64,000 nt of DNA from Mobula birostris (Eukaryota), in assembly GCF_030028105.1 (NCBI RefSeq), contig NC_092374.1, forward strand, positions 8,546,998 through 8,610,997, given 5' to 3'. The notes below the pieces were generated by a model. It saw nothing but the letters and a program-made list of their open reading frames with translations. It was not told where the DNA came from and did no database searches. How positions within the stretch are numbered: position 1 is the stretch's first letter; each line of letters opens with the position of its first letter. The translations under genes were made by a program, and so were the position numbers. Shown here in pieces: positions 10,936-59,703 of this stretch.

Positions 10936-10939
10936 CTTA

Positions 10940-13639: not shown

Positions 13640-13721
13640 CAAAATAAAATGGCAGATTTTGGAAATTTAAAATAAATAAACCCTGAAAATGCTGCAAATA
13701 CTCAACTGGACAGGCAGTGTA
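13640..13721 (-). mobile_element. Penelope-like tail remnant forming the left flank of the satellite
   Basis: GGCAGATTTTGGAAAT...AAATGCTGCAAATACTCAACTGGACAGGCAGTGTATGTGG aligns to GCAGATGCTGGAAAT...GCTG..GAACTCAGCAGGTCGGGCAGCATCTGTGG of the copies at 49140, 57490 and 59704. Confidence 0.7.
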
Positions 13722-16700
13722 TGTGGAAAGAGAAAGAGAGTGATGTTTCGTGTGGAAAGAGAAACAGAGTGACATTTCTTATGGAAAGAGAAACAGTGAC
13801 ATTTCGTGTGGAAAGAGAACAGAGTGACGTTTCGTGTGGAAAGAGAACAGAGTGACATTTCGTATGGAAAGAGAAACAGAGTGACGTTTCGTGTGGAAAG
13901 AGAACAGAGTGACATTTCGTATGGAAAGAGAAACAGAGTGACATTTTTTATGGAAAGAGAAACAGAGTGACGTTTCGTGTGGAAAGAGAAACAGAGTGAC
14001 ATTTCGTGTGGAAAGAGAACAGAGTGACGTTTCGTGTGGAAAGAGAAACAGAGTGATGTTTCGTGTGGAAAGAGAATCAGAGTGACGTTTCGTGTGGAAA
14101 GAGAAACAGAGTGACGTTGCGTGTGGAAAGAGAACAGAGTGACGTTTCGTGTGGAAAGAGAAACAGAGTGACATTTCGTGTGGAAAGAGAAACAGAGTGA
14201 CGTTTCGTGTGGAAAGAGAAACAGAGTGACATTTCTTATGGAAAGAGAAACAGAGTGACATTTCATGTGGAAAGAGAAACAGAGTGACGTTTCGTGTGGA
14301 AAGAGAAACAGAGTGACGTTTCGTGTGGAAAGAGAAACAGAGTTACATTTCGTATGGAACAGAGTGACGTTTCGTGTGGAAAGAGAAACAGAGTGACGTT
14401 TCGTGTGGAAAGAGAACAGAGTGACGTTTCGCGTGGAAAGAGAAACAGAGTTACTTTTTGTGTGGAAAGAGAAACAGAGTGACATTTCGGGTGGAAAGAG
14501 AAACAGAGTGACGTTTCGTGTGGAAAGAGAACAGAGTGATGTTTCGTGTGGAAGGAGAAACAGAGTGACATTTCGTGTGGAAAGGGAAACAGAGTGACGT
14601 TTCGTGTGGAAAGAGAAACAGAGTGACATTTCATATGGAACAGAGTGACGTTTTGTGTGGAAAGAGAACAGAGTGACGTTTCTTGTGGAAAGAGAAACAG
14701 AGTGACGTTTCTTATGGAAAGAGAAACAGAGTGACATTTCGTATGGAACAGAGTGACGTTTCGTGTGGAAAGAGAAACAGAGTGACGTTTCGTGTGGAAA
14801 GAGAAACAGAATGACGTTTCTTATGGAAAGAGAAACAGAGTGACATTTCGTGTGGAAAGAGAAACAGACTGAGGTTTCGTGTGGAAAGAGAAACAGAGTG
14901 ACGTTTCGTGTCAAAAGAAAAACAGAGTGACGTTTCGTGTGGAAAGAGAACAGAGTGACGTTTCGCGTGGAAAGAGAAACAGAGTGACTTTTCGTGTGGA
15001 AAGAGAAACAGAGTGACATTTCGGGTGGAAAGAGAAACAGAGTGACGTTTCGTGTGGAAAGAGAACAGAGTGACATTTCGTGTGGAAAGAGAAACAGAGT
15101 GACATTTCATGTGGAAAGGGAAACAGAGTGATGTTTCGTGTGGAAAGAGAAAGAGAGTGACATTTCGTATGGAACAGAGTGACGTTTTGTGTGGAAAGAG
15201 AACAGAGTGACATTTCTTGTGGAAAGAGAAACAGAGTGACATTTCTTATGGAAAGAGAAACAGAGTGACATTTCGTATGGAAAGAGAAACAGAGTGATGT
15301 TTCATGTGGAAAGAGAAACAGAGTGACGTTTCGTGTGGAAAGAGAAACACAGTGAGGTTTCGTGTGGAAAGAGAAACAGAGTGACGTTTCGTGTCAAAAG
15401 AGAAACAGTCACATTTCGTACGGAACAGAGTGACGTTTCGTGTGGAAAGAGAAACAGAGTGACGTTTCGTGTGGAAAGAGAAACAGAGTGATATTTCGTC
15501 TGGAACAGAGTGACGTTTCGTGTGGAAAGAGAAACAGAGTGACATTTCTTATGGAAAGAGAAACAGAGTGATATTTCGTGTGGAAAGAGAAACAGAGTGA
15601 TATTTCGTATGGAACAGAGTGACGTTTTGTGTGGAAAGAGAAATAGAGTGACGTTTCGTCTGGAAAGAGAACAGAGTGACATTTCGTGTGGAAAGAGAAA
15701 CAGAGTGACGTTTCATGTGGAAAGAGAAACAGAGTGACGTATCTTATGGAAAGAGAAACAGAGTGACGTTTCGTGTGGAAAGAGAAAGAAAGTGATGTTT
15801 CGCGTGGAAAGAAAAACAGAGTGACGTTTCGTGTGGAAAGAGAAACAGAGTGACGTTTCGTGTGGAAAGAGATATAGAGTGACATTTCTTATGGAAAGAG
15901 AAACAGAGTGACATTTCGTGTGGAAAGAGAAACAGAGTGACTTTTCGTGTGGAAAGAGAAACAGAGTGACATTTCTTATGGAAAGAGAAACAGAGTGACA
16001 TTTCGTGTGGAAAGAGAAACAGAGTGAAGTTTCGTGTGGAAAGAGAACAGAGTGACGTTTCGTGTGGAAAGAGAAACAGAGAGACATTTTGTGTGGAAAG
16101 AGAAATAGAGTGACGTTTCGTGTGGAAAGAGAAACAGAGTGACATTTCGTATGGAACAGAGTGACGTTTCGTGTGGAAAGAAAAACAGAGTGACATTTCT
16201 TATGGAAAGGGAAACAGAGTGACATTTTGTGTGGAATGTGAAACAGGGTGATATTTCATATGGAACAGAGTGACGTTTCGTGTGAAAAGAGAACAGAGTG
16301 ACGTTTCGTCTGGAAAGAGAATAGAGTGACGTTTCATGTGGAAAGAGAAACAGGGTGACGTTTCGTGTGGAAAGAGAAACAGAGTGACGTTTCTTATGGA
16401 AAGAGAAACAGAGTGATGTTTCGTGTGGAAAGAGAAACAGAGTGACATTTCGTGTGGAAAGAGAAACAGAGTGACGTTTCGTGTCAAAAGAGAAACAGTC
16501 ACATTTCGTACGGAACAGAGTGACGTTTCGTGTGGAAAGAGAAACAGAGTGACATTTTGTGTGGAAAGAGAAGCAGAGTGACGTTTCGTGTGGAAAGAGA
16601 AACAGAGTGACATTTTGTGTGGAATGTGAAACAGGGTGATATTTCATATGGAACAGAGTGACATTTCGTGTGAAAAGAGAACAGAGTGACGTTTCGTCTG

Positions 16701-19700
16701 GAAAGAGAATAGAGTGACATTTCATGTGGAAAGAGAAACAGGGTGACGTTTCGTGTGGAAAGAGAAACAGAGTGACGTTTCTTATGGAAAGAGAAACAGA
16801 GTGATGTTTCGTGTGGAAAGAGAAACAGAGTGACATTTCGTGTGGAAAGAGAAACAGAGTGACGTTTCGTGTCAAAAGAGAAACAGTCACATTTCGTACG
16901 GAACAGAGTGACGTTTCGTGTGGAAAGAGAAACAGAGTGACGTTTCGTGTGGAAAGAGAAACAGAGTGACATTTTGTGTGGAAAGAGAAGCAGAGTGACG
17001 TTTCGTGTGGAAAGAGAAACAGAGTGACATTTCGTATGGAACAGAGTGACGTTTCGTGTGGAAAGAAAAACAGAGTGATATTTCGCATGGAACAGAGTGA
17101 CGTTTCGTGTGGAAAGAGAACAGAGTGACGTTTCGTGTGGAAAGAGAAACAGAGTGACGTTTCATGTGGAAAGAGAAACAGAGTGACGTTTCTTATGGAA
17201 AGAGAAACAGAGTGACGTTTCGTGTGGAAAGAGAAAGAAAGTGATGTTTCGCGTGGAAAGAGAAACAGAATGACGTTTCGTGTGGAAAGAGAAATAGAGT
17301 GACATTTCTTATGGAAAGAGAAACAGAGTGACATTTCGTGTGGAAAGAGAAACAGAGTGACATTTCTTATGGAAAGAGAAACAGAGTGACGTGTCGTGTG
17401 GAAAGAGAAACAGAGTGAAGTTTCGTGTGGAAAGAGAACAGAGTGACGTTTCATGTGGAAAGAGAAACAGAGTGAAATTTCGTATGGAACAGAGTGACGT
17501 TTCGTGTGGAAAGAAAAACAGAGTGACATTTCTTATGGAAAGGGAAACAGAGTGACATTTTGTGTGGAATGTGAAACAGAGTGATATTTCATATGGAACA
17601 GAGTGAAGTTTCGTGTGGAAAGAGAAATAGAGTGACGTTTCGTCTGGAAAGAGAACAGAGTGACGTTTCATGTGGAAAGAGAAACAGGTGACGTTTCGTG
17701 TGGAAAGAGAAACAGAGTGACGTTTCTTATGGAAAGAGAAACAGAGTGATGTTTCGTGTGGAAAGAGAAAAAGAGTGACATTTCGTGTGGAAAGAGAAAC
17801 ACAGTGAGGTTTCGTGTGGAAAGAGAAACAGAGTGACTTTTTGTGTGGAAAGAGAAACAGAGTGACATTTCGGGTGGAAAGAGAAACAGAGTGACGTTTT
17901 GTGTGGAAAGAGAACAGAGTGATGTTTCGTGTGGAAGGAGAAACAGAGTGACATTTCGTGTGGAAAGGGAAACAGAGTGACGTTTCGTGTGGAAAGAGAA
18001 ACAGAGTGACATTTCGTATGGAACAGAGTGACGTTTTGTGTGGAAAGAGAACAGAGTGACGTTTCTTGTGGAAAGAGAAACAGAGTGACGTTTCTTATGG
18101 AAAGAGAAACAGAGTAACATTTCGTATGGAACAGAGTGACGTTTCGTGTGGAAAGAGAAACAGAGTGACGTTTCGTGTGGAAAGAGAAACAAAATGACGT
18201 TTCTTATGGAAAGAGAAACAGAGTGACATTTCGTGTGGAAAGAGAAACAGAGTGAGGTTTCGTGTGGAAAGAGAAACAGAGTGACGTTTCGTGTCAAAAG
18301 AAAAACAGAGTGACGTTCCGTGTGGAAAGAGAACAGAGTGACGTTTCGCGTGGAAAGAGAAACAGAGTGACTTTTCGTGTGGAAAGAGAAACAGAGTGAC
18401 ATTTCGGGTGGAAAGAGAAACAGAGTGACGTTTCGTGTGGAAAGAGAACAGAGTGACATTTCGTGTGGAAAGAGAAACAGAGTGACATTTCATGTGGAAA
18501 GGGAAACAGAGTGATGTTTCGTGTGGAAAGAGAAAGAGAGTGACATTTCGTATGGAACAGAGTGACGTTTTGTGTGGAAAGAGAACAGAGTGACATTTCT
18601 TGTGGAAAGAGAAACAGAGTGACATTTCTTATGGAAAGAGAAACAGAGTGACATTTCGTATGGAAAGAGAAACAGAGTGATGTTTCATGTGGAAAGAGAA
18701 ACAGAGTGACGTTTCGTGTGGAAAGAGAAACACAGTGAGGTTTCGTGTGGAAAGAGAAACAGAGTGACGTTTCGTGTCAAAAGAGAAACAGTCACATTTC
18801 GTACGGAACAGAGTGACGTTTCGTGTGGAAAGAGAAACAGAGTGACGTTTCGTGTGGAAAGAGAAACAGAGTGACATTTCTTATGGAAAGAGAAACAGAG
18901 TGATATTTCGTGTGGAAAGAGAAACAGAGTGATATTTCGTATGGAACAGAGTGACGTTTTGTGTGGAAAGAGAAATAGAGTGACGTTTCGTCTGGAAAGA
19001 GAACAGAGTGACATTTCGTGTGGAAAGAGAAACAGAGTGACGTTTCATGTGGAAAGAGAAACAGAGTGACGTATCTTATGGAAAGAGAAACAGAGTGACG
19101 TTTCGTGTGGAAAGAGAAAGAAAGTGATGTTTCGCGTGGAAAGAAAAACAGAGTGACGTTTCGTGTGGAAAGAGAAACAGAGTGACGTTTCGTGTGGAAA
19201 GAGATATAGAGTGACATTTCTTATGGAAAGAGAAACAGAGTGACATTTCGTATGGAAAGAGAAACAGAGTGACATTTCTTATGGAAAGAGAAACAGAGTG
19301 ACATTTCGTGTGGAAAGAGAAACAGAGTGAAGTTTCGTGTGGAAAGAGAACAGAGTGACGTTTCGTGTGGAAAGAGAAACAGAGAGACATTTTGTGTGGA
19401 AAGAGAAATAGAGTGACGTTTCGTGTGGAAAGAGAAACAGAGTGACATTTCGTATGGAACAGAGTGACGTTTCGTGTGGAAAGAAAAACAGAGTGACATT
19501 TCTTATGGAAAGGGAAACAGAGTGACATTTTGTGTGGAATGTGAAACAGGGTGATATTTCATATGGAACAGAGTGACGTTTCGTGTGAAAAGAGAACAGA
19601 GTGACGTTTCGTCTGGAAAGAGAATAGAGTGACGTTTCATGTGGAAAGAGAAACAGGGTGACGTTTCGTGTGGAAAGAGAAACAGAGTGACGTTTCTTAT

Positions 19701-22700
19701 GGAAAGAGAAACAGAGTGATGTTTCGTGTGGAAAGAGAAACAGAGTGACATTTCGTGTGGAAAGAGAAACAGAGTGACGTTTCGTGTCAAAAGAGAAACA
19801 GTCACATTTCGTACGGAACAGAGTGACGTTTCGTGTGGAAAGAGAAACAGAGTGACGTTTCGTGTGGAAAGAGAAACAGAGTGACATTTTGTGTGGAAAG
19901 AGAAGCAGAGTGACGTTTCGTGTGGAAAGAGAAACAGAGTGACATTTTGTGTGGAATGTGAAACAGGGTGATATTTCATATGGAACAGAGTGACATTTCG
20001 TGTGAAAAGAGAACAGAGTGACATTTCGTCTGGAAAGAGAATAGAGTGACATTTCATGTGGAAAGAGAAACAGGGTGACGTTTCGTGTGGAAAGAGAAAC
20101 AGAGTGACGTTTCTTATGGAAAGAGAAACAGAGTGATGTTTCGTGTGGAAAGAGAAACAGAGTGACATTTCGTGTGGAAAGAGAAACAGAGTGACGTTTC
20201 GTGTTAAAAGAGAAACAGTCACATTTCGTACGGAACAGAGTGACGTTTCGTGTGGAAAGAGAAACAGAGTGACGTTTCGTGTGGAAAGAGAAACAGAGTG
20301 ACATTTTGTGTGGAAAGAGAAGCAGAGTGACGTTTCGTGTGGAAAGAGAAACAGAGTGACATTTCGTATGGAACAGAGTGACGTTTCGTGTGGAAAGAAA
20401 AACAGAGTGATATTTCGCATGGAACAGAGTGACGTTTCGTGTGGAAAGAGAACAGAGTGACGTTTCGTGTGGAAAGAGAAACAGAGTGACGTTTCATGTG
20501 GAAAGAGAAACAGAGTGACGTTTCTTATGGAAAGAGAAACAGAGTGACGTTTCGTGTGGAAAGAGAAAGAAAGTGATGTTTCGCGTGGAAAGAGAAACAG
20601 AGTGACGTTTCGTGTGGAAAGAGAAATAGAGTGACATTTCTTATGGAAAGAGAAACAGAGTGACATTTCGTGTGGAAAGAGAAACAGAGTGACATTTCTT
20701 ATGGAAAGAGAAACAGAGTGACGTGTCGTGTGGAAAGAGAAACAGAGTGAAGTTTCGTGTGGAAAGAGAACAGAGTGACGTTTCATGTGGAAAGAGAAAC
20801 AGAGTGAAATTTCGTATGGAACAGAGTGACGTTTCGTGTGGAAAGAAAAACAGAGTGACATTTCTTATGGAAAGGGAAACAGAGTGACATTTTGTGTGGA
20901 ATGTGAAACAGAGTGATATTTCATATGGAACAGAGTGAAGTTTCGTGTGGAAAGAGAAACAGAGTGACATTTCGTGTGGAAAGAGAAACAGAGTGACGTT
21001 TCGTGTCAAAAGAGAAACAGTCACATTTCGTACGGAACAGAGTGACGTTTCGTGTGGAAAGAGAAACAGAGTGACGTTTCGTGTGGAAAGAGAAACAGAG
21101 TGACATTTTGTGTGGAAAGAGAAGCAGAGTGACGTTTCGTGTGGAAAGAGAAACAGAGTGACATTTTGTGTGGAATGTGAAACAGGGTGATATTTCATAT
21201 GGAACAGAGTGACATTTCGTGTGAAAAGAGAACAGAGTGACGTTTCGTCTGGAAAGAGAATAGAGTGACATTTCATGTGGAAAGAGAAACAGGGTGACGT
21301 TTCGTGTGGAAAGAGAAACAGAGTGACGTTTCTTATGGAAAGAGAAACAGAGTGATGTTTCGTGTGGAAAGAGAAACAGAGTGACATTTCGTGTGGAAAG
21401 AGAAACAGAGTGACGTTTCGTGTCAAAAGAGAAACAGTCACATTTCGTACGGAACAGAGTGACGTTTCGTGTGGAAAGAGAAACAGAGTGACGTTTCGTG
21501 TGGAAAGAGAAACAGAGTGACATTTTGTGTGGAAAGAGAAGCAGAGTGACGTTTCGTGTGGAAAGAGAAACAGAGTGACATTTCGTATGGAACAGAGTGA
21601 CGTTTCGTGTGGAAAGAAAAACAGAGTGATATTTCGCATGGAACAGAGTGACGTTTCGTGTGGAAAGAGAACAGAGTGACGTTTCGTGTGGAAAGAGAAA
21701 CAGAGTGACGTTTCATGTGGAAAGAGAAACAGAGTGACGTTTCTTATGGAAAGAGAAACAGAGTGACGTTTCGTGTGGAAAGAGAAAGAAAGTGATGTTT
21801 CGCGTGGAAAGAGAAACAGAGTGACGTTTCGTGTGGAAAGAGAAATAGAGTGACATTTCTTATGGAAAGAGAAACAGAGTGACATTTCGTGTGGAAAGAG
21901 AAACAGAGTGACATTTCTTATGGAAAGAGAAACAGAGTGACGTGTCGTGTGGAAAGAGAAACAGAGTGAAGTTTCGTGTGGAAAGAGAACAGAGTGACGT
22001 TTCATGTGGAAAGAGAAACAGAGTGAAATTTCGTATGGAACAGAGTGACGTTTCGTGTGGAAAGAAAAACAGAGTGACATTTCTTATGGAAAGGGAAACA
22101 GAGTGACGTTTTGTGTGGAATGTGAAACAGAGTGATATTTCATATGGAACAGAGTGAAGTTTCGTGTGGAAAGAGAAATAGAGTGACGTTTCGTCTGGAA
22201 AGAGAACAGAGTGACGTTTCATGTGGAAAGAGAAACAGGTGACGTTTCGTGTGGAAAGAGAAACAGAGTGACGTTTCTTATGGAAAGAGAAACAGAGTGA
22301 TGTTTCGTGTGGAAAGAGAAAAAGAGTGACATTTCGTGTGGAAAGAGAAACACAGTGAGGTTTCGTGTGGAAAGAGAAACAGAGTGACTTTTTGTGTGGA
22401 AAGAGAAACAGAGTGACATTTCGGGTGGAAAGAGAAACAGAGTGACGTTTTGTGTGGAAAGAGAACAGAGTGATGTTTCGTGTGGAAGGAGAAACAGAGT
22501 GACATTTCGTGTGGAAAGGGAAACAGAGTGACGTTTCGTGTGGAAAGAGAAACAGAGTGACATTTCGTATGGAACAGAGTGACGTTTTGTGTGGAAAGAG
22601 AACAGAGTGACGTTTCTTGTGGAAAGAGAAACAGAGTGACGTTTCTTATGGAAAGAGAAACAGAGTAACATTTCGTATGGAACAGAGTGACGTTTCGTGT

Positions 22701-34700: not shown

Positions 34701-37700
34701 GAGTGACGTTTCTTATGGAAAGAGAAACAGAGTGACGTTTCATGTGGAAAGAGAAAGAAAGTGATGTTTCGCGTGGAAAGAGAAACAGAGTGACGTTTCG
34801 TGTGCTAAGAGAAACAGAGTGATGTTTCGTGTGGAAAGAGAAACAGAGTGACATTTTGTGTGGAAAGAGAAACAGAGTGATGTTTCGTGTGGAAAGAGAA
34901 ATAGAGTGACGTTTCATGTGGAAAGAGAAACAGAGTGACATTTTGTGTGGAAAGAGAAACAGAGTGACGTTTCGTGTGGAAAGAGAAACAGAGTGACATT
35001 TCGTATGGAACAGAGTGACGTTTCGTGTGGAAAGAAAAACAGAGTGACATTTCTTATGGAAAGGGAAACAGAGTGACATTTTGTGTGGAATGAGAAACAG
35101 AGTGATATTTCATATGGAACAGAGTGACGTTTCGTGTGGAAAGAGAAACAGAGTGACGTTTCTTATGGAAAGAGAAACAGAGTGATGTTTCGTGTGGAAA
35201 GAGAAACAGAGTGACATTTCGTGTGGAAAGAAAAACACAGTGAGGTTTCGTGTGGAAAGAGAAACAGAGTGACGTTTCGTGTCAAAAGAGAAACAGTCAC
35301 ATTTCGTACGGAACAGAGTGACGTTTCGTGTGGAAAGAGAAACAGAGTGACGTTTCGTGTGGAAAGAGAAACAGAGTGACATTTTGTGTGGAAAGAGAAA
35401 CAGAGTGACGTTTCGTGTGGAAAGAGAAACAGAGTGACATTTCGTATGGAACAGAGTGACGTTTCGTGTGGAAAGAAAAACAGAGTGATATTTCGTATGG
35501 AACACAGTGACGTTTCGTGTGGAAAGAGAACAGAGTGACATTTCGTGTGGAAAGAGAAACAGAGTGACATTTCATGTGGAAAGGGAAACAGAGTGATGTT
35601 TCGTGTGGAAAGAGAAAGAGAGTGACATTTCGTATGGAACAGAGTGACGTTTTGTGTGGAAAGAGAACAGAGTGACATTTCTTGTGGAAAGACAAACAGA
35701 GTGACATTTCTTATGGAAAGAGAAACAGAGTGACATTTCGTATGGAAAGAGAAACAGAGTGATGTTTCATGTGGAAAGAGAAACAGAGTGACGTTTCGTG
35801 TCAAAAGAGAAACAGTCACATTTCGTACGGAACAGAGTGACGTTTCGTGTGGAAAGAGAAACAGAGTGACGTTTCGTGTGGAAAGAGAAACAGAGTGATA
35901 TTTCGTATGGAACAGAGTGACGTTTCGTGTGGAAAGAGAAACAGAGTGACATTTCTTATGGAAAGAGAAACAGAGTGATATTTCGTTTGGAAAGAGAAAC
36001 AGAGTGATATTTCGTATGGAACAGAGTGACGTTTTGTGTGGAAAGAGAAATAGAGTGACGTTTCGTCTGGAAAGAGAACAGAGTGACGTTTCGTGTGGAA
36101 AGAGAAACAGAGTGACGTTTCATGTGGAAAGAGAAACAGAGTGACGTATCTTATAGAAAGAGAAACAGAGTGACGTTTCGTGTGGAAAGAGAAAGAAAGT
36201 GATGTTTCGCTTGGAAAGAGAAACAGAGTGACGTTTCGTGTGGAAAGAGAAACAGAGTGACGTTTCGTGTGGAAAGAGATATAGCGTGACATTTCTTATG
36301 GAAAGAGAAACAGAGTGACATTTCGTGTGGAAAGAGAAACAGAGTGACATTTCGTGTGGAAAGAGAAACAGAGTGACTTTTCGTGTGGAAAGAGAAACAG
36401 AGTGACATTTCTTATGGAAAGAGAAACAGAGTGACGTGTCGTGTGGAAAGAGAAACAGAGTGAAGTTTCGTGTGGAAAGAGAACAGAGTGACGTTTCGTG
36501 TGGAAAGAGAAACAGAGAGACATTTTGTGTGGAAAGAGAAATAGAGTGACGTTTCGTGTGGAAAGAGAAACAGAGTGACATTTCGTATGGAACAGAGTGA
36601 CGTTTCGTGTGGAAAGAAAAACAGAGTGACATTTCTTATGGAAAGGGAAACAGAGTGACATTTTGTGTGGAATGTGAAACAGGGTGATATTTCATATGGA
36701 ACAGAGTGACGTTTCGTGTGGAAAGAGAACAGAGTGACGTTTCGTCTGGAAAGAGAACAGAGTGACGTTTCTTATGGAAAGAGAAACAGTGATGTTTCGT
36801 GTGGAAAGAGAAACAGAGTGACATTTCGTGTGGAAAGAGAAACACAGTGAGGTTTCGTGTGGAAAGAGAAACAGAGTGACGTTTCGTGACAAAAGAGAAA
36901 CAGTCACATTTCGTACGGAACAGAGTGACGTTTCGTGTGGAAAGAGAAACAGAGTGACGTTTCGTGTGGAAAGAGAAACAGAGTGACATTTTGTGTGGAA
37001 AGAGAAACAGAGTGACGTTTCGTGTGGAAAGAGAAACAGAGTGACATTTCGTATGGAACAGAGTGACGTTTCGTGTGGAAAGAAAAACAGAGTGATATTT
37101 CGTATGGAACAGAGTGACGTTTCGTGTGGAAAGAGAACAGAATGACGTTTCGTGTGGAAAGAGAAACAGAGTGACGTTTCGTGTGGAAAGAGAAATAGAG
37201 TGACGTTTCATCTGGAAAGAGAACAGAGTGACGTTTCGTGTGGAAAGAGAAACAGTGTGACGTTTCATGTGGAAAGAGAAACAGAGTGACGTTTCTTATG
37301 GAAAGAGAAACAGAGTGACGTTTCGTGTGGAAAGAGAAAGAAAGTGATGTTTCGCGTGGAAAGAGAAACAGAGTGACGTTTCGTGTGGAAAGAGAAATAG
37401 AGTGACATTTCTTATGGAAAGAGAAACAGAGTGACATTTCGTGTGGAAAGAGAAACAGAGTGACATTTCTTATGGAAAGAGAAACAGAGTGACGTGTCCT
37501 GTGGAAAGAGAAACAGAGTGAAGTTTCGTGTGGAAAGAGAATAGAGTGACGTTTCATGTGGAAAGAGAAACAGAGTGAAATTTCGTATGGATCAGAGTGA
37601 CGTTTCGTGTGGAAAGAGAAACAGAGTGACATTTTGTGTGGAAAGAGAAACAGAGTGACGTTTCGTGTGGAAAGAGAAACAGAGTGACATTTCGTATGGA

Positions 37701-40700
37701 ACAGAGTGACGTTTCGTGTGGAAAGAAAAACAGAGTGACATTTCTTATGGAAAGGAAAACAGAGTGACGTTTCGTGTGGAAAGAGAAATAGAGTGACGTT
37801 TCGTCTGGAAAGAGAACAGAGTGGTGTTTCATGTGGAACGAGAAACAGGGTGACGTTTCGTGTGGAAAGAGAAACAGAGTGACGTTTCTTACGGAAAGAG
37901 AAACAGAGTGATGTTTCGTATGGAAAGAGAAACAGAGTGACATTTCGTGTGGAAAGAGAAACACAGTGAGGTTTCGTGTGGAAAGAGAAACAGAGTGACG
38001 TTTCGTGTCAAAAGAGAAACAGTCACATTTCGTACGGAACAGAGTGACGTTTCATGTGGAAAGAGAAACAGAGTGACGTTTCGTGTGGAAAGAGAAACAG
38101 AGTGATATTTCGTATGGAACAGAGTGACGTTTCGTGTGGAAAGAGAAACAGAGTGACGTTTCATCTGGAAAGAGAACAGAGTGACGTTTCGTGTGGAAAG
38201 AGAAACAGTGTGACGTTTCATGTGGAAAGAGAAACAGAGTGACGTTTCTTATGGAAAGAGAAACAGAGTGACGTTTCATGTGGAAAGAGAAAGAAAGTGA
38301 TGTTTCGCGTGGAAAGAGAAACAGAGTGACGTTTCGTGTGCTAAGAGAAACAGAGTGATGTTTCGTGTGGAAAGAGAAACAGAGTGACATTTTGTGTGGA
38401 AAGAGAAACAGAGTGATGTTTCGTGTGGAAAGAGAAATAGAGTGACATTTCTTATGGAATGAGAAACAGAGTGACATTTCGTGTGGAAAGAGAAACAGAG
38501 TGACATTTCTTATGGAAAGAGAAACAGAGTGACGTGTCGTCTGGAAAGAGAAACAGAGTGAAGTTTCGTGTGGAAAGAGAACAGAGTGACGTTTCGTGTG
38601 GAAAAAGAAACAGAGTGACATTTTGTGTGGAAAGAGAAACAGAGTGACGTTTCGTGTGGAAAGAGAAACAGAGTGACATTTCGTATGGAACAGAGTGACG
38701 TTTCGTGTGGAAAGAAAAACAGAGTGACATTTCTTATGGAAAGGGAAACAGAGTGACATTTTGTGTGGAATGTGAAACAGAGTGATATTTCATATGGAAC
38801 AGAGTGACGTTTCGTGTGGAAAGAGAAATAGAGTGACGTTTCATCTGGAAAGAGAACAGAGTGACGTTTCATGTGGAAAGAGAAACAGGGTGACGTTTCG
38901 TGTGGAAAGAGAAACAGAGTGACGTTTCTTATGGAAAGAGAAACAGAGTGATGTTTCGTGCGGAAAGAGAAACAGAGTGACATTTCGTGTGGAAAGAGAA
39001 ACACAGTGAGGTTTCGTGTGGAAAGAGAAACAGAGTGACGTTTCGTGTCAAAAGAGAAACAGTCACATTTCGTACGGAACAGAGTGACTTTTCGTGTGGA
39101 AAGAGAAACAGAGTGACGTTTCGTGTGGAAAGAGAAACAGAGTGATATTTCGTATGGAACAGAGTGACGTTTCGTGTGGAAAGAGAAACAGAGTGACATT
39201 TCTTATGGAAAGAGAAACAGAGTGATGTTTCGTGTGGAAAGAGAAATAGAGTGATGTTTCATCTGGAAAGAGAACAGAGTGACGTTTCGTGTGGAAAGAG
39301 AAACAGTGTGACGTTTCATGTGGAAAGAGAAACAGAGTGACGTTTCTTATGGAAAGAGAAACAGAGTGACGTTTCATGTGGAAAGAGAAAGAAAGTGATG
39401 TTTCGCGTGGAAAGAGAAACAGAGTGACGTTTCGTGTGCTAAGAGAAACAGAGTGATGTTTCGTGTGGAAAGAGAAACAGGGTGACGTTTCGTGTGGAAA
39501 GAGAAACACAGTGAGGTTTCGTGTGGAAAGAGAAACAGAGTGACGTTTCGTGTCAAAAGAGAAACAGTCAAATTTCATACGGAACAGAGTGACGTTTCGT
39601 GTGGAAAGAGAAACAGAGTGACATTTTGTGTGGAAAGAGAAACAGAGTGACGTTTCGTGTGGAAAGAGAAACAGAGTGACATTTCGTATGGAGCAGAGTG
39701 ACGTTTCGTGTGGAAAGAAAAACAGAGTGACATTTCTTATGGAAAGGGAAACAGAGTGACATTTTGTGTGGAATGAGAAACAGAGTGATATTTCATATGG
39801 AACAGAGTGACGTTTCGTGTGGAAAGAGAAATAGAGTGACGTTTCGTCTGGAAAGAGAACAGAGTGGTGTTTCATGTGGAAAGAGAAACAGGGTGACGTT
39901 TCGTGTGGAAAGAGAAACAGAGTGACGTTTTGTGTGGAAAGAGAAACAGAGTGACGTTTCGTGTGGAAAGAGAAATAGAGTGACATTTCTTATGGAATGA
40001 GAAACAGAGTGACATTACGTGTGGAAAGAGAAACAGAGTGACATTTCTTATGGAAAGAGAAACAGAGTGACGTGTCGTGTGGAAAGAGAAACAGAGTGAA
40101 GTTTCGTGTGGAAAGAGAACAGAGTGACGTTTCGTGTGGAAAAAGAAACAGAGTGACATTTTGTGTGGAAAGAGAAACAGAGTGACGTTTCGTGTGGAAA
40201 GAGAAACAGAGTGACATTTCGTATGGAAAGGGAAACAGAGTGACATTTTGTGTGGAATGTGAAACAGAGTGATATTTCATATGGAACAGAGTGACGTTTC
40301 GTGTGGAAAGAGAAATAGAGTGACGTTTCGTCTGGAAAGAGAACAGAGTGACGTTTCATGTGGAAAGAGAAATAGGGTGACGTTTCGTGTGGAAAGAGAA
40401 ACAGAGTGACGTTTCTTATGGAAAGAGAAACAGAGTGATGTTTCGTGCGGAAAGAGAAACAGAGTGACATTTCGTGTGGAAAGAGAAACACAGTGAGGTT
40501 TCGTGTGGAAAGAGAAACAGAGTGACGTTTCGTGTCAAAAGAGAAACAGTCACATTTCGTACGGAACAGAGTGACGTTTCGTGTGGAAAGAGAAACAGAG
40601 TGACGTTTCATGTGGAAAGAGAAACAGAGTGACATTTTGTGTGGAAAGAGAAACAGAGTGACGTTTCGTGTGGAAAGAGAAACAGAGTGACATTTCGTAT

Positions 40701-43700
40701 GGAACAGAGTGACGTATCGTGTGGAAAGAAAAACAGAGTGACATTTCTTATGGAAAGCGAAACAGAGTGACATTTTGTGTGGAATGAGAAACAGAGTGAT
40801 ATTTCATATGGAACAGAGTGACGTTTCGTGTGGAAAGAGAAACAGAGTGACGTTTCTTATGGAAAGAGAAACAGAGTGATGTTTCGTGTGGAAAGAGAAA
40901 CAGAGTGACATTTCGTGTGGAAAGAGAAACACAGTGAGGTTTCGTGTGGAAAGAGAAACAGAGTGACGTTTCGTGTCAAAAGAGAAACAGTCACATTTCG
41001 TACGGAACAGAGTGACGTTTCGTGTGGAAAGAGAAACAGAGTGACGTTTCGTGTGGAAAGAGAAACAGAGTGACATTTTGTGTGGAAAGAGAAACAGAGT
41101 GACGTTTCGTGTGGAAAGAGAAACAGAGTGACATTTCGTATGGAACAGAGTGACGTTTCGTGTGGAAAGAAAAACAGAGTGATATTTCGTATGGAACACA
41201 GTGACGTTTCTGTGGAAAGAGAACAGAGTGACATTTCGTGTGGAAAGAGAAACAGAGTGACATTTCATGTGGAAAGGGAAACAGAGTGATGTTTCGTGTG
41301 GAAAGGGAAAGAGAGTGACATTTCGTATGGAACAGAGTGACGTTTTGTGTGGAAAGAGAACAGAGTGACATTTCTTGTGGAAAGACAAACAGAGTGACAT
41401 GTCTTATGGAAAGAGAAACAGAGTGACATTTCGTATGGAAAAAGAAACAGAGTGATGTTTCATGTGGAAAGAGAAACAGAGTGACGTTTCGTGTCAAAAG
41501 AGAAACAGTCACATTTCGTACGGAACAGAGTGACGTTTCGTGTGGAAAGAGAAATAGAGTGACGTTTCATCTGGAAAGAGAACAGAGTGACGTTTCGTGT
41601 GGAAAGAGAAACAGTGTGACGTTTCATGTGGAAAGAGAAACAGAGTGACGTTTCTTATGGAAAGAGAAACAGAGTGACGTTTCATGTGGAAAGAGAAAGA
41701 TAGTGATGTTTCGCGTGGAAAGAGAAACAGAGTGACGTTTCTTATGGAAAGAGAAACAGAGTGACGTTTCGTGTGGAAGGAGAAAGAAAGTGATGTTTCG
41801 CGTGGAAAGAGAAACAGAGTGACGTTTCGTGTGGAAAGAGAAATAGAGTGACATTTCTTATGGAAAGAGAAACAGAGTGACATTTCGTGTGGAAAGAGAA
41901 ACAGAGTGACATTTCTTATGGAAAGAGAAACAGAGTGACGTGTCCTGTGGAAAGAGAAACAGAGTGAAGTTTCGTGTGGAAAGAGAATAGAGTGACGTTT
42001 CATGTGGAAAGAGAAACAGAGTGAAATTTCGTATGGATCAGAGTGACGTTTCATGTGGAAAGAGAAACAGAGTGAAGTTTCGTGTGGAAAGAGAACAGAG
42101 TGACGTTTCGTGTGGAAAGAGAAACAGAGTGACATTTTGTGTGGAAAGAGAAACAGAGTGACGTTTCGTGTGGAAAGAGAAACAGAGTGACATTTCGTAT
42201 GGAACAGAGTGACGTTTCGTGTGGAAAGAAAAACAGAGTGACATTTCTTATGGAAAGGAAAACAGAGTGACTTTTCTTGTGGAAAGAGAAATAGAGTGAC
42301 GTTTCGTCTGGAAAGAGAACAGAGTGGTGTTTCATGTGGAACGAGAAACAGGGTGACGTTTCGTGTGGAAAGAGAAACAGAGTGACGTTTCTTATGGAAA
42401 GAGAAACAGAGTGATGTTTCGTATGGAAAGAGAAACAGAGTGACATTTCGTGTGGAAAGAGAAACACAGTGAGGTTTCGTGTGGAAAGAGAAACAGAGTG
42501 ACGTTTCGTGTCAAAAGAGAAACAGTCACATTTCGTACGGAACAGAGTGACGTTTCATGTGGAAAGAGAAACAGAGTGACGTTTCGTGTGGAAAGAGAAA
42601 CAGAGTGATATTTCGTATGGAACAGAGTGACGTTTCGTGTGGAAAGAGAAACAGAGTGACATTTCTTATGGAAAGAGAAACAGAGTGACGCTTCGTGTGC
42701 AAAGAGAAATAGAGTGACGTTTCATCTGGAAAGAGAACAGAGTGACGTTTCGTGTGGAAAGAGAAACAGTGTGACGTTTCATGTGGAAAGAGAAACAGAG
42801 TGACGTTTCTTATGCAAAGAGAAACAGAGTGACGTTTCATGTGGAAAGAGAAAGAAAGTGATGTTTCGCGTGGAAAGAGAAACAGAGTGACGTTTCGTGT
42901 GCTAAGAGAAACAGAGTGATGTTTCGTGTGGAAAGAGAAACAGAGTGACATTTTGTGTGGAAAGAGAAACAGAGTGATGTTTCGTGTGGAAAGAGAAATA
43001 GAGTGACATTTCTTATGGAATGAGAAACAGAGTGACATTTCGTGTGGAAAGAGAAACAGAGTGACATTTCTTATGGAAAGAGAAACAGAGTGACGTGTCG
43101 TCTGGAAAGAGAAACAAAGTGAAGTTTCGTGTGGAAAGAGAACAGAGTGACGTTTCGTGTGGAAAAAGAAACAGAGTGACATTTTGTGTGGAAAGAGAAA
43201 CAGAGTGACGTTTCGTGTGGAAAGAGAAACAGAGTGACATTTCGTATGGAACAGAGTGACGTTTCGTGTGGAAAGAAAAACAGAGTGACATTTCTTATGG
43301 AAAGGGAAACAGAGTGACATTTTGTGTGGAATGTGAAACAGAGTGATATTTCATATGGAACAGAGTGACGTTTCGTGTGGAAAGAGAAATAGAGTGACGT
43401 TTCATCTGGAAAGAGAACAGAGTGACGTTTCATGTGGAAAGAGAAACAGGGTGACGTTTCGTGTGGAAAGAGAAACAGAGTGACGTTTCTTATGGAAAGA
43501 GAAACAGAGTGATGTTTCGTGCGGAAAGAGAAACAGAGTGACATTTCGTGTGGAAAGAGAAACACAGTGAGGTTTCGTGTGGAAAGAGAAACAGAGTGAC
43601 GTTTCGTGTCAAAAGAGAAACAGTCACATTTCGTACGGAACAGAGTGACGTTTCGTGTGGAAAGAGAAACAGAGTGACGTTTCGTGTGGAAAGAGAAACA

Positions 43701-46135
43701 GAGTGACATTTTGTGTGGAAAGAGAAACAGAGTGACGTTTCGTGTGGAAAGAGAAACAGAGTGACATTTCGTATGGAACAGAGTGACGTTTCGTGTGGAA
43801 AGAAAAACAGAGTGACATTTCTTATGGAAAGGGAAACAGAGTGACATTTTGTGTGGAATGAGAAACAGAGTGATATTTCATATGGAACAGAGTGACGTTT
43901 CGTGTGGAAAGAGAAATAGAGTGACGTTTCGTCTGGAAAGAGAACAGAGTGACGTTTCGTGTGGAAAGAGAAGCAGAATGACGTTTCGTGTGGAAAGAGA
44001 ACAGAGTGACGTTTCGTGTGGAAAGAGAAACAGAATGACGTTTCGTGTGGAAACAGAAACAGAGTGACGTTTCGTGTGGAAAGAGAACAGAGTGACGTTT
44101 CGTGTGGAAAGAGAAACAGAGTGACGTTTTGTGTGGAAAGAGAAACAGAGTGACATTTCATATGGAAGAGAGTGACGTTTCATGTGGAAAGAGTACAGAG
44201 TGATGTTTCGTGTGGAAAGAGAAGCAGAGTGACGTTTCGTGTGGAAAGAGAAACAGAGTGACAGTTCTTATGGAAAGAGAAACGGTGACATTTCGTCTGG
44301 AAAGAGAAACAGAGTGACGTTTCGTGTGGAAAGAGAACAGAGTGACGTTTCGTGTGGAAAGAGAAACAGAGTGACATTTCGTGTGGAAAGAGAACAGAGT
44401 GACGTTTCGTGTGGAAAGAGAAACAGAGTGACGTTTCGTGTGGAAAGAGAAACAGAGTGACGTTTCGTGTGGAAAGAGAAACAGAGTGACGTTTCGTGTG
44501 GAAAGAGAAGCAGAATGACGTTTCGTGTGGAAAGAGAACAGAGTGACATTTCTTATGGAAAGAGAAACAGAGTGACATTTCGTGTGGAAAGAGAAACAGA
44601 GTGACGTTTCATGTGGAAAGAGAAACAGAGTGACGTTTCTTATGGAAAGTGAAACAGAGTGACGTTTCGTGTGGAAAGAGAAACAGAGTGAAGTTTCGTG
44701 TGGAAAGAGAACAGAGTGACGTTTCATGTGGAAAGAGAAACAGCGTGACGTTTCATGTGGAAAGAGGAACAGAGTGACATTTCGTGTGGAAAGAGAAACA
44801 GAGTGACGTTTCGTGGGGAAAGAGAAAAGAGTGACCTCTTGTGTGGAAAGAGAAACAGAGTGATGTATCGTGTGGAAAGAGAAACAGAGTGACATTTCGT
44901 GTGGAAAGAGAAACAGAGTGACGTTTCGTGTGGAAAGAGAAACACAGTGACATTTCTTATGGAAAGAGAAACAGAGTGACGTTTTGTGTGGAAAGAGAAC
45001 AGAGTGACGTTTCGTGTGGAAAGAGAAACAGAGTGACGTTTCTTATGGAAAGAGAAACAAAGTGACGTTTCGTGTGGAAAGAGAAACAGAGTGACGTTTC
45101 TTATGGAAAGAGAAAAAGAGTGACGTTTCATGTGGAAAGAGAAACAGAGTGACGTTTCTTATGGAAAGAGAAACAGAGTGATGTTTCATGTGGAAAAAGA
45201 AATAGAGTGACGTTTCGTGTGGAAAGAGAATCAGAGTTACATTTCGTATGGAACAGAGTGACATTTCGTGTGGAAAGAGAACAGAGTGACGTTTCGTGTG
45301 GAAAGAGAAACAGAATGACGTTTCGTGTGGAAAGAGAAACAGAGTGACGTTTCGTGTGGAAAGAGAAACAGTGTGACGTTTCGTGTGGAAAGAGAACAGA
45401 GTGACGTTTCGTGTGGAAAGAGAAACAGAGTGACGTTTTGTGTGGAAAGAGAAACAGAGTGACATTTCATATGGAAGAGAGTGACGTTTCATGTGGAAAG
45501 AGAACAGAGTGATGTTTCGTGTGGAAAGAGAAGCAGAGTGACGTTTCGTGTGGAAAGAGAAACAGAGTGACATTTCTTATGGAAAGAGAAACGGTGACAT
45601 TTCGTCTGGATAGAGAAACAGAGTGACGTTTCGTGTGGAAAGAGAACAGAGTGACGTTTCGTGTGGAAAGAGAAACAGTGACATTTCGTGTGGAAAGAGA
45701 ACAGAGTGACGTTTCGTGTGGAAAGAGAAACAGAGTGACGATTTGTGTGGAAAGAGAAACAGACTGACATTTCATATGGAAGAGAGTGACGTTTCATGTG
45801 GAAAGAGAACAGAGTGATGTTTCGTGTGGAAAGAGAAGCAGAGTGACGTTTCGTGTGGAAAGAGAAACAGAGTGACGTTTCGTGTGGAAAGAGAAGCAGA
45901 GTGACGTTTCGTGTGGAAAGAGAAACAGAGTGACATTTCTTATGGAAAGAGAAACGGTGACATTTCGTCTGGAAAGAGAAACAGAGTGACGTTTCGTGTG
46001 GAAAGAGAACAGAGTGACGTTTCGTGTGGAAAGAGAAACAGAGTGACGTTTCATGTGGAAAGAGAAACAGAGTGACATTTCTTATGGAACAGAGTGACGT
46101 TTCATGTGGAAAGAGAACAGAGTGACGTTTTGTGT
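13722..46135. repeat. ~32.4-kb tandem satellite, 29-bp monomer GTGACGTTTCGTGTGGAAAGAGAAACAGA with 28-, 27- and 22-bp variants and multi-kb higher-order repeats
   Basis: Direct reading. The ORF track repeats the 29-aa unit SLSTRNVTLFLFPHETSLCFSFHTKRHSV (3 x 29 nt). Roughly 1100-1200 monomers by length estimate. Confidence 0.99.
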
Positions 46136-46156
46136 CCAAGACTTCATCGCAACTGA
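46136..46156 (-). mobile_element. Penelope-like remnant forming the right flank of the satellite (decayed CTGATGA half of the hammerhead)
   Basis: (GACGTTTTGTGT)CCAAGACTTCATCGCAACTGA versus GACGTTTCAGGCCGAGACCCTTCGTCAGGACTAACTGA at 59812-59849. Confidence 0.6.
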
Positions 46157-49135: not shown

Positions 49136-49139
49136 TGAA

Positions 49140-57489: not shown

Positions 57490-57699
57490 ACAGTCACAAC
57501 ACGCTGAAGGAACTCAGCAGGTCGGGCAGCATCTGTGGAAAAGATCGGTCGATGTTTCGGGCCGGAACCCTTCATCAGTCCAGGTTCCGGCCCGAAACGT
57601 CGACCGATCTTTTCCACGATGCTGCCCGACCTGCCGAGTTCTTCCAGCGTGTTGTGAGTGTTGCTTTGACTCCTGCATCTGCAGATTATTTTGTATTTT
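57490..57699. mobile_element. 210-bp palindromic Penelope-like tail insertion in L1
   Basis: ~75-bp inverted arms 57494-57569 and 57583-57657; 14-bp TSD TGATTTTAATGGTA at 57476-57489 and 57700-57713. Confidence 0.85.
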
Positions 57700-58168: not shown

Positions 58169-59703
58169 ATTGCTATATCTGATCATGCGCCTCTGAGTTT
58201 GTCTTTTGAATTTGATGATGTCATTCTTGTTCTCCCACCATGGCGCATGTCTCAGACCTTATTGCAAAACTCCGACTTTGTCAGTTTCATTGAAACCCAG
58301 ATAAAAGAAATTTTTCTTTTTAATGATATAGGGGGTACGTCTAAATTAATCATATGGGATACATTTAAAGCATTTTTACATGGTCAGATCATTTCTTATT
58401 CAGCTAAGCTTAAAACAGAGTAAAGTAGAATTAGATAAGATTTCAAAACAAATTAAAGACTTAGATAATATTTGTTCAATTTCCCCTAATACTGATTTAT
58501 TCAAACAAAGGGTGGAACTCCAATCACAATATAATCTATTATTAACTCATCATATTGAAGGCTATTTGCTTCAGTTAAATAGCCAATTTTATATGTTTGG
58601 AGATAAAAATAATAGACTGCTTGTATCTCAATTAAAAATGGCTAGAGCCAAAAGGCAAATTTTGAAAATCCGTAGGAAAGATGGTACCCTGGCTTGGGAA
58701 TATAAAGAAATTAATAAGATTTTTCAAGATTTTTATGCTGAACTTTATAAATCTCAATATCTAGTAGATTCTTCTAAAATGAATGCTTTCTTACGAAAGA
58801 TTGCTTTTCCTAAAATTTCTGTTGAGAATCAAAAAACTCTTGATGCCCAAGTTACTGAAGCCGAAATTCATTAAGCTATTTTTTCAATGCAGTCTGGTAA
58901 GGCCCTTGGACTTGATGGCTGTCCTGTAGAATTTTATAAAAAATTTGGAAAATTGCTTTCTCCGTATACGTTGGAAATGCTTCAGGATTCTTTTGTGAAA
59001 GGTGATTTACCCTCTACTTTTAATGAAGCTTCTATTTCTTTAATTCTTAAAAAGGACAAAGATCCTACTGATTGCGCCTCATATAGACTTATTTCCTTAT
59101 TGAATGTCGATGCCAAGATTCTGTCAAAGATAATGACCAATCGGTTGGACAACATTTTGGGTAAAATTTCTTTTAAAGATCAAACAGGCTTTATAAAGTG
59201 TTGTATTCTTTTTCAAATGTTCGGAGATTATCTAACATTATATATTCGTCCTCTTTTAAAACTCCACAATGCGTCGTCTCTTTGGATGCTGAAAAAGCGT
59301 TCGATAGAGTCTAATGGAAATATTTATTTAATGTTTTAGAGAAATTTGTCTTTGGTGTTAATTTTAATAATTGGATTAGAGTGATATATAGAACTCCTAT
59401 TGCAACTGTTATTACTAATAACTGTAGGTCTCCTTTTTCAGCCTTTTGTTATTTAATTTAATATTAGAATCCCTTGCTATTGCTCTTCGTGAAGCTAAAG
59501 AATTTATAGGATTTCTGTAAATGTGACCATTCATAAGATTTCTTTTTACGCTGACAATTTACTGGTTTATATATACAATCCCGAGGAATCTATTCCTGCC
59601 TTGCTAAAATTATTTAATGAATTTGGAAACTTTTTCAGGATATAAAATAAACTGTTTCCTTTAAATGAATCTGTTTCTATATATGATAATACTCCTTTCA
59701 AAG

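What the first reader, a model, noticed from the sequence alone, without database searches (positions are those of the whole stretch)
13640..46156. A 32-kb satellite appears to have been amplified from inside a Penelope hammerhead-ribozyme tail, with both halves of the parent element still on the flanks
Seen: the left flank (GCTGCAAATACTCAACTGGACAGGCAGTGTATGTGGAAAGAGAAAGAGAGTGATGTTTCG) aligns with the Penelope tails in this window, e.g. 57503 GCTGAAGGAACTCAGCAGGTCGGGCAGCATCTGTGGAAAAGATCGGTCGATGTTTCG. The right flank (GACGTTTTGTGTCCAAGACTTCATCGCAACTGA) continues that element (cf. GACGTTTCAGGCCGAGACCCTTCGTCAGGACTAACTGA at 59812). Removing all but one monomer rebuilds a single collinear tail. On the minus strand the monomer is ACGAAACGTCACTCTGTTTCTCTTTCCAC, i.e. 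the GAA-ACGU-C half of the hammerhead plus downstream sequence. Known: Penelope-like elements carry minimal hammerheads, and TE-derived satellites exist. Inference: local slippage (GTGT/TGT microhomology) followed by unequal exchange expanded a 29-bp piece over 1000-fold in place, so the birthplace of the array is still readable.
Basis: partly seen in the sequence, partly recalled or inferred. Interest (0 to 1): 0.85.

Follow-up and report, generated by a model that had tools for sequence, protein, structure and literature searches.

The report
Satellite born inside a Penelope tail
A 32-kb block of about 1,150 copies of a 29-base unit grew, in this species' lineage only, out of a short piece of an old retrotransposon tail that still adjoins it on the left; this is a clean but ordinary example of how satellite DNA arises from a mobile element.

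Summary
The array is real: 13722-46135, period 29, about 1,159 units, with 28- and 22-base variants and kb-scale internal duplications. The left flank (13651-13721) belongs to the hammerhead-bearing repeat family that has seven other copies in this window. The 29-base unit is the next stretch of that tail, in register (12.2 to 18.4 bits, P<=0.0007; native register best of 29 shifts). With the array collapsed to one unit, the locus is the only non-training hit of the family profile (E 4e-6, one collinear alignment). The right flank is weaker. It reads like a decayed CUGAUGA half, but three controls give P 0.01-0.14, and alone it gives no profile hit.

Both junctions are single-copy in the source genome. 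Unit depth there (about 600-1,800 copy equivalents) matches this one array. A relative about 5-6% diverged has both orthologous junctions but only about 1-20 unit equivalents. A more distant relative has none.

So the reading is in-place, lineage-specific growth in two stages: an old short seed, then block amplification (blocks 98.3-99.8% identical, edges not homogenised). The units lack the CUGAUGA box, so this is neither a ribozyme array nor a retrozyme. It is a new member of a known kind; interest is modest.

The parts
13651..13721 (-). Left flank: the 3' part of an old, decayed Penelope-type tail (family profile positions 88-151), read on the minus strand
   Evidence: nhmmer hit on the left flank alone, profile positions 73-151 with the first unit and 88-151 without it. 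Hundreds of other genomic copies lie on 13650-13739 at 80% likeness or more: depth 120-1870 against 4.84 for unique sequence.
13722..13750 (-). First unit, which is the parent copy of the repeated piece. It continues the tail in register and differs from the array consensus at 2 positions.
   Evidence: Appending the unit to the left tail raises the profile score from 12.2 to 17.0 bits (first unit) or 18.4 bits (consensus unit). P is 0.003 and 0.0007 against random genomic 29-mers, and the native register is the best of 29 circular shifts.
13722..46135 (.). Satellite array: 29-base unit, about 1,159 copies, 32,414 bases; units of 28 and 22 bases interspersed; plus strand 69% purine
   Evidence: No CTGANGA box on either strand, and 525 GAAACGTC on the minus strand.
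16514..27157 (.). Recently amplified core of the array. 19567-23450 matches 23280-27157 at 99.36%; 16514-18892 matches 24778-27157 at 99.79%; 16514-18940 matches 21065-23498 at 98.85%.
   Evidence: Self-megablast. Dominant 40-mer offsets are 1219, 3713, 417, 4551 and 3332. The share of recurring 60-mers is 0.9-1.0 here.
38067..43724 (.). Second duplicated block pair: 38067-39164 matches 42621-43724 at 98.28%
43722..46135 (.). Right edge of the array, not homogenised. The first ~1 kb at the left edge (13722-14722) behaves the same way.
   Evidence: Recurring 60-mers are only 0.23-0.55 here, and 0.29 at the left edge. The best internal relatives of the edge stretches are only 80-87% identical.
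46133..46156 (-). Right flank: possible decayed 5' half of the hammerhead. The minus strand reads GCGATGAA, then a small GTC..GAC hairpin, where the family has CTGATGAA plus helix II.
   Evidence: The consensus alignment runs through it, but support is weak: P 0.01-0.14, and there is no hit on its own.
57490..57699 (.). Reference family copy: a 210-base fold-back insertion with an intact hammerhead core at 57554-57578 (minus strand). It is flanked by a 14-base target-site duplication (57476-57489 and 57700-57713) and sits inside an L1-like element.
   Evidence: Read directly; core pattern; profile hits E 1e-38 and 2e-32.
59696..59873 (-). Reference family copy with an intact core (59815-59839, CTGACGA...GAAAC), helix I of 5 pairs, and helix II of 4 pairs after one unpaired A

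Best explanation
A 5'-truncated tail of a Penelope-type retroelement inserted here long ago and decayed. It belongs to the family whose terminal repeat carries a minimal, dimer-type hammerhead. A 29-base piece of it became tandemly duplicated. On the element's sense strand this piece runs from the GAAAC-GUC end of the ribozyme through helix I's 3' strand and about 18 bases further. The duplication was probably slippage between two TGT triplets 29 bases apart (inferred). The result stayed a short seed array for a long time. During that time its units diverged to about 90% of consensus, lost many CpGs, and spawned 28- and 22-base deletion forms. In the lineage of the source species, kb-scale blocks of these already-diverged units were then amplified by unequal exchange or a similar recombination-based process. 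This took the array from at most a few tens of units to about 1,150 (32 kb). The centre was homogenised at block level and the edges were left old. The array has no complete ribozyme, and no function is needed to explain it. Shown here: the array, the family membership of the left flank, the in-register identity of the unit with the tail, the single-copy junctions, the block structure, and the low copy number in relatives. Inferred: the slippage step, the exchange mechanism, and the order of events.
For: Array and variants. Family membership and collinearity: the collapsed locus is the only non-training hit, E 4.1e-6, profile positions 39-151, and it is 70% identical to the consensus over 125 columns. 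The unit is the next piece of the tail in register: score rises from 12.2 to 18.4 bits, P<=0.0007, 0 of 1,500 shuffles reach it, and the native register is the best of 29. In place: a source-genome contig covers 12951-13766 with 0 differences at depth 4.84, and another covers 46096-46479 with 1 difference at depth 5.85, so both junctions are single-copy. Only array: unit-bin depths of 3,257-8,683 over 4.84-5.85 give about 600-1,800 copy equivalents, against 1,159 units assembled here. Lineage-specific: organism C has orthologous contigs at 12961-13609, 13580-13751 and 46116-46322, about 5-6% diverged. It also has a single-copy contig over the last unit. Its unit-bin depths are only 12.5-289 over 11.8-13.6, that is about 1-21 equivalents, and it holds under 5% of the array's 31-mers. 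Organism D has 0-7.5. Two stages: unit identity to consensus is about 0.90 everywhere, while kb blocks are 98.3-99.8% identical. The edges lack close block relatives. CpG decay: site 1 reads CG 477, CA 296, TG 79; site 2 reads CG 627, CT 144, CA 128, TG 94.
Against: The right flank is not significantly like the family. The parent may therefore have ended at or near the unit, and 'rebuilding one tail' rests mostly on the left flank plus the unit. No target-site duplication of 8 bases or more was found. Depths from Logan contigs are sums of assembler word depths, not copy numbers, so the counts for organisms A, C and D are rough. Unitigs in organism C break at the array, so its units were not shown to lie at this locus and were not counted directly. 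The family profile rests on only seven copies from this window. No Penelope reverse-transcriptase gene lies in the window, so 'Penelope' rests on the ribozyme architecture and the literature. The assembled array length was not checked independently.
Confidence: 0.78

Rival explanations
1. Same in-place origin, but the parent tail was 5'-truncated at about the right end of the unit. The right flank is then plain host DNA, and only one half of the parent survives.
For: The right flank gives no profile hit alone. Its contribution to the joined score is within the range of random sequence, P 0.08-0.12. No family copies lie on it. Penelope insertions are commonly 5'-truncated at variable points (general knowledge, and the varied starts of the copies).
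Against: The consensus alignment does run on through GATGAA and CAGT at the expected spacing. The mean anchored scores are in the top 1-7% of controls. On the minus strand a small hairpin stands where helix II should be.
Confidence: 0.35
2. The array was born in a Penelope tail somewhere else and arrived here together with part of that tail. The route would be segmental duplication, or transposition of an element that already carried an internal minisatellite.
For: Mobile elements with internal tandem repeats are known seeds of satellites (PMC12692304). Other very large element-derived satellites are noted elsewhere in this genome by first-stage readers (unchecked).
Against: Both junctions are single-copy in the source genome. 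Unit depth is accounted for by this array alone. A relative has the same junctions with few units. Family copies that lie on the left flank leave it at about 13735 and do not continue into unit-like sequence (loose ends).
Confidence: 0.06
3. It is a retrozyme-like or ribozyme-active tandem array: a functional hammerhead in each unit, propagated through circular RNA.
For: Tandem hammerhead repeats derived from Penelope terminal repeats exist in vertebrates (preprint 10.64898/2026.07.22.740005; PMC7229834). One RNA run of the source species holds 8% of the array's sampled words.
Against: The defining feature, a complete type I hammerhead in each unit, was tested and is absent: 0 CTGANGA boxes in 32 kb on either strand. 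A 29-base unit is far shorter than any retrozyme unit. Rfam finds nothing.
Confidence: 0.01
4. The likeness of the unit to the tail is chance, or the array length is an assembly artefact.
For: The unit is short, and the profile is built from few copies. Satellites are hard to assemble.
Against: The register and append tests argue against chance, as does E 4.1e-6. Read-derived depth of about 600-1,800 unit equivalents agrees with the 1,159 assembled units.
Confidence: 0.04

Closest known systems
Satellite DNAs derived from parts of transposable elements: 'tandemization' of a structural part, and seed arrays that expand in some species (reviewed in PMC12692304, which lists Penelope elements among the sources)
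   Same: A short internal piece of a mobile element is repeated head to tail and expanded to tens of kb. It is long in one species and a short seed in a relative. The centre is homogenised and the edges are diverged.
   Different: The whole genomic complement appears to sit at one locus. The parent element is still attached in register on one side. The unit (29 bases) is cut from within a ribozyme motif rather than from a UTR repeat, LTR or terminal inverted repeat.
Minimal hammerhead ribozymes in the terminal repeats of Penelope-like elements (Cervera and de la Pena 2014, PMC4209133)
   Same: The parent family has the described architecture. It has a CUGAUGA core, one unpaired base before helix II, and a short helix I. 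It has no helix III loop but a palindromic ACGU before the cleavage-site C, so it should act as a dimer. It is dispersed mostly as solo, truncated or fold-back copies.
   Different: The array keeps only the GAAAC-GUC side of the motif, and the copy at this locus has a dead core. Nothing here should cleave.
Non-LTR retrozymes and the classical hammerhead satellites, such as newt satellite 2 and Schistosoma Sm-alpha (PMC7229834; preprint 10.64898/2026.07.22.740005)
   Same: They are tandem repeats that descend from Penelope terminal repeats carrying hammerhead sequence.
   Different: Those units are a few hundred bases long, each holds a complete type I hammerhead, and they spread through RNA. 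Here the unit is a 29-base fragment without the catalytic box, it is confined to one locus, and it grew by DNA-level duplication.

Membership tests
Penelope-like element terminal repeat with minimal hammerhead (parent family) | Conserved core CUGANGA ... GAAA, followed by a palindromic ACGU without a loop and the cleavage-site C | tested here: met
   Intact in two window copies, 57554-57578(-) and 59815-59839(-), each followed by ACGTC or ACATC. The pattern count alone is not above chance (3 found, 1.7 expected). The two real ones lie inside family copies with E 1e-32 to 1e-43.
Penelope-like element terminal repeat with minimal hammerhead (parent family) | Short helix I (4-5 pairs), and helix II preceded by one unpaired base | tested here: met
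   Copy at 59804-59846(-): helix I UAGUC/GACUG has 5 pairs. Helix II GGGU/GCCU has 4 pairs with a tetraloop after an unpaired A (and direct reading). Helix II is shorter than the 7-8 pairs reported for Schistosoma families (PMC4209133).
Penelope-like element terminal repeat with minimal hammerhead (parent family) | Physical link to a Penelope gene (telomerase-like reverse transcriptase plus GIY-YIG endonuclease) | not testable with these tools
   No such gene lies in this window. The Pfam scan of the larger reading frames found only LINE-type RT fragments, a zf-RVT tail and a V-set domain. The rest of the genome cannot be searched with the tools given.
Penelope-like element terminal repeat with minimal hammerhead (the copy at this locus) | Sequence membership in the same repeat family, collinear across the collapsed array | tested here: met
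   E 4.1e-6, profile positions 39-151; 70% identity to the consensus. Its own core is dead: GCGATGA stands for CTGATGA.
Transposable-element-derived satellite born in place | The unit is homologous to a segment of the element, and the flank continues the element in register | tested here: met
   Left side: (P<=0.0007; best of 29 registers).
Transposable-element-derived satellite born in place | The other flank continues the element on the far side of the unit | tested here: inconclusive
   P 0.01-0.14 in three controls; no hit alone.
Transposable-element-derived satellite born in place | The orthologous site in relatives holds the element with no array or a short one, and there are no other arrays in the genome | tested here: met
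   Organism C has both junctions and about 1-21 unit equivalents. Organism D has none. Source-genome depth equals about one array. These are rough, depth-based figures, and the units were not counted on a spanning read.
Non-LTR retrozyme | Every tandem unit holds a complete type I hammerhead (criterion of preprint 10.64898/2026.07.22.740005) | tested here: not met
   0 CTGANGA boxes in the array on either strand.
Rfam hammerhead families | A match to a curated hammerhead covariance model | tested here: not met
   No hit at gathering score in the window. No hammerhead hit up to E 10 in 57400-60000. The loop-less minimal form is not what those models describe, so this says little about the parent family.

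The most novel reading that the evidence does not exclude
Minus-strand transcripts of the array would string together more than 500 GAAAC-GUC half-sites. Each has the ACGU palindrome through which Penelope minimal hammerheads are thought to dimerise. Such RNA could pair in trans with active Penelope ribozymes and act as a decoy or trans-substrate that interferes with processing of the element's RNA. The only hint is that one RNA run of the species holds 8% of the array's sampled words. The helix I partner in the unit is a poor match to the family, which argues against this reading.
Probability: 0.03. Interest if true: 0.75.

Novelty: new member of a known kind. Interest (0 to 1): 0.35.

Why it matters
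Most satellites are met long after their origin, when the source sequence and the first locus can no longer be identified. This one has four useful properties:
- The parent element is still attached in register.
- The satellite seems to exist at one locus only.
- A close relative appears to keep the short seed state.
- A further relative has none.

That makes it a convenient, datable case for studying how a seed array turns into a satellite: rates, block sizes and the role of CpG decay. It also shows that fragments of ribozyme motifs can be multiplied a thousand-fold without any ribozyme activity, which is a caution for motif-based hammerhead counts. It does not change any concept in the field.

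Tried and rejected
- Rfam at gathering score on the whole window and at E up to 10 on 57400-60000. There were no hammerhead hits, only weak microRNA-like matches to the fold-back copy. These models do not cover the loop-less minimal form, so the motif was checked by pattern and by reading.
- The CTGANGA...GAAAC pattern count is not above chance as a count. It is useful only because two of the three hits lie in family copies.
- Minimum-energy folds and co-folds of the ribozyme stretches. They show helices I and II of the copy at 59804-59846, but they also pair core bases, so they say nothing about activity.
- Search for a target-site duplication around the collapsed element. No shared word of 8 bases or more was found, only two 7-mers.
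- Possible second, inverted copy in the right flank (a TTCCAGTC...GTCTGAGG stretch near 46205-46245), which would make the parent a fold-back like 57490-57699. There was no profile hit on either strand, so this was dropped.
- The long minus-strand reading frames across the array are a mechanical result of a unit without stop codons. They are not genes.


Full report
**What is there.** Tandem Repeats Finder reports one array from 13722 to 46135, with period 29 and 1159.1 copies (82% matches, 6% indels). Splitting the array at a fixed anchor gives about 730-770 units of 29 bases, about 120 of 28 and about 90-130 of 22. The 22-base form lacks seven bases of the purine run. The plus strand of the unit is 69% purine.

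**The parent family.** They are at 2791-2976(+), 7091-7263(+), 10935-11110(-), 49130-49295(-), 57553-57711(+), 57480-57599(-) and 59696-59873(-).
- Two copies keep an intact core on the minus strand: CTGATGA...GAAAC at 57554-57578 and CTGACGA...GAAAC at 59815-59839.
- In the copy at 59804-59846, helix I has five pairs. Helix II has four pairs after one unpaired A. GAAAC is followed directly by GUC, so positions ACGU form a loop-less palindrome.
- This is the minimal, dimer-type hammerhead described for the terminal repeats of Penelope-like elements, including fish families. It is also described as spread through genomes as solo motifs (PMC4209133).
- The pair at 57490-57699 is a 210-base fold-back insertion with a 14-base target-site duplication inside an L1-like element.
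- Rfam's hammerhead models do not see any of these copies.
- No Penelope gene lies in the window. The name therefore rests on the ribozyme architecture and the literature.

**Left flank and unit.**
- I built a profile from the seven copies and searched the window with the array collapsed to a single unit. The locus is the only hit that is not a training sequence: E 4.1e-6, in one collinear alignment from profile position 39 to 151. It runs on the minus strand from 46148 across the join to 13651. The next background hit has E 0.56.
- Against the majority consensus the collapsed locus is 87/125 = 70% identical. The seven copies themselves are 70-87% identical to it.
- The tail part left of the first unit scores 12.2 bits alone. 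Adding the consensus unit in its native register gives 18.4 bits and extends the alignment to position 57.
- Only 0.07% of 1,500 random genomic 29-mers and none of 1,500 shuffles do as well. The native register is the best of the 29 circular shifts of the unit.
- In public contigs of the source species, hundreds of family copies lie on 13650-13739 and then leave it near 13735. They do not continue into unit-like sequence.
- The unit is therefore the next 29 bases of this very tail, in register. On the element's sense strand it covers GAAAC-GUC, the 3' strand of helix I and about 18 further bases.

**Right flank.** On the minus strand the first 24 bases after the array read CAGTTGCGATGAAGTCTTGGACA, where the family has CAGTCCTGATGAAGGGTCTCAGCC. 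The consensus alignment runs through them. The controls do not make this significant:
- Anchored global alignment to six copies: P 0.04-0.14.
- Gain in profile score over random appended sequence: P 0.08-0.12.
- Best anchored prefix alignment: P 0.01-0.11.
- The right flank alone gives no profile hit on either strand.
- No other genomic copy lies on it at 80% likeness.
- I found no target-site duplication.

The right half is possible but unproven. The parent may equally have been truncated at about the unit.

**Is this the birthplace?** Logan contigs of public runs were laid on both junctions.
- Source species (organism A): one contig covers 12951-13766 without a difference at depth 4.84. Another covers 46096-46479 with one difference at depth 5.85. 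Both junctions are therefore single-copy.
- Summed depth in the unit bins is 3,257-8,683, or about 600-1,800 copy equivalents. That is what this array alone (1,159 units) would give. It also speaks against a gross assembly error.
- Organism C has orthologous contigs at 12961-13609 (32 differences), 13580-13751 (10 differences and one gap, ending at the end of the first unit) and 46116-46322 (12 differences). It also has a single-copy contig over the last unit, which there has the 29-base form. Flank divergence is about 5-6%.
- Unit-bin depth in organism C is only 12.5-289 against 11.8-13.6 for unique sequence, about 1-21 equivalents. Its runs hold under 5% of the array's sampled 31-mers. The breaks of its contigs at the unit boundaries fit a short array rather than a single unit, but no contig spans it.
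- Organism D, with flanks 12-14% diverged, shows depth 0-7.5 in the unit bins.
- Organisms B and E hold 7-11% of the array words, and B has the left junction letter for letter.

These depths are sums of assembler word depths and are rough. The contrast of two orders of magnitude is not subtle.

**How it grew.**
- Unit identity to the consensus is about 0.90 in every 2-kb bin. The two CpGs of the unit are widely decayed: site 1 reads CG 477, CA 296, TG 79; site 2 reads CG 627, CT 144, CA 128, TG 94.
- Yet kb-scale blocks are nearly identical. 19567-23450 matches 23280-27157 at 99.36%, 16514-18892 matches 24778-27157 at 99.79%, 16514-18940 matches 21065-23498 at 98.85%, and 38067-39164 matches 42621-43724 at 98.28%. 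Dominant offsets are 1219, 3713, 417, 4551 and 3332.
- The share of 60-mers that recur is 0.9-1.0 in the centre, but 0.29 in the first kilobase and 0.23-0.55 in the last 2.4 kb. The edge stretches have no internal relative above 80-87%.
- The units therefore diverged first, in a short array. Blocks of diverged units were multiplied later, in the middle. This fits the short array in organism C and the usual behaviour of arrays that grow by unequal exchange.
- The first duplication may have used the TGT that stands at both ends of the unit (GTA-TGT-GG... and ...TTCG-TGT-CC). A three-base match proves nothing.

**What it is not.** There is no CTGANGA box anywhere in the 32 kb on either strand, while GAAACGTC occurs 525 times on the minus strand. 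The array is therefore not a retrozyme, whose criterion is a complete type I hammerhead in each unit (preprint 10.64898/2026.07.22.740005). It cannot self-cleave. The long minus-strand reading frames are a by-product of a unit without stop codons.

**Comparison and novelty.** A recent review describes satellites that arise by tandem repetition of a part of a mobile element, explicitly including Penelope elements. It also describes short seeds that are long arrays in one species and low-copy in another (PMC12692304). First-stage notes on this genome mention other very large satellites next to CR1 and LTR sequences (unchecked). This case is a new member of that kind. It is unusually legible: the parent is still attached in register on one side, the satellite appears confined to its birthplace, and relatives seem to preserve the seed state and the empty state.

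**Verdict.** The 'both halves' claim and the microhomology step remain unproven. Interest is modest (0.35).

Noticed in passing
window 57476-57713: A 210-base fold-back Penelope-type insertion (two inverted tail pieces, with an intact hammerhead core on the minus strand at 57554-57578). It has a perfect 14-base target-site duplication (57476-57489 and 57700-57713) and sits inside an L1-like element whose RT fragments run to about 59340.
   Followed up: partly
window 48028-48611: A 291-base unit present exactly twice in tandem at 100% identity. It is either a very recent duplication or an assembly stutter.
   Followed up: no
window 60572-61240 (+): A reading frame with an immunoglobulin V-set domain (Pfam E 2.9e-11). 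The satellite lies about 14 kb from an Ig-type receptor exon, in line with first-stage notes on V-domain genes just beyond the window's end.
   Followed up: no
window 12904-12989 and 46446-46700: Extremely abundant repeats. Summed contig depth is 10^5 to 10^6 in the source species, against about 5 for unique sequence, and similar in organisms C and D.
   Followed up: no
window 30000-31200 (array interior): One run labelled RNA from the source species (X12) holds 8% of the array's sampled words. The array may be transcribed, or the library may carry genomic DNA.
   Followed up: no
window 13630-13774: A very small run of organism B (39 million letters of contigs) holds an exact 145-base contig across the left junction at depth 8.6, although unique sequence beside it is not covered. 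This suggests a reduced-representation or enriched library, or extra copies of this junction in that organism.
   Followed up: no
window 4447-5046 (+): A reading frame with a match to Pfam ALKBH8_N (E 2.7e-9, above the curated cut-off) in a region otherwise full of mobile-element debris.
   Followed up: no
window 46601-47224 (-): A LINE reverse-transcriptase C-terminal zinc-binding domain (zf-RVT, E 1e-9) about 470 bases to the right of the array. The array sits between mobile-element remains on both sides.
   Followed up: no
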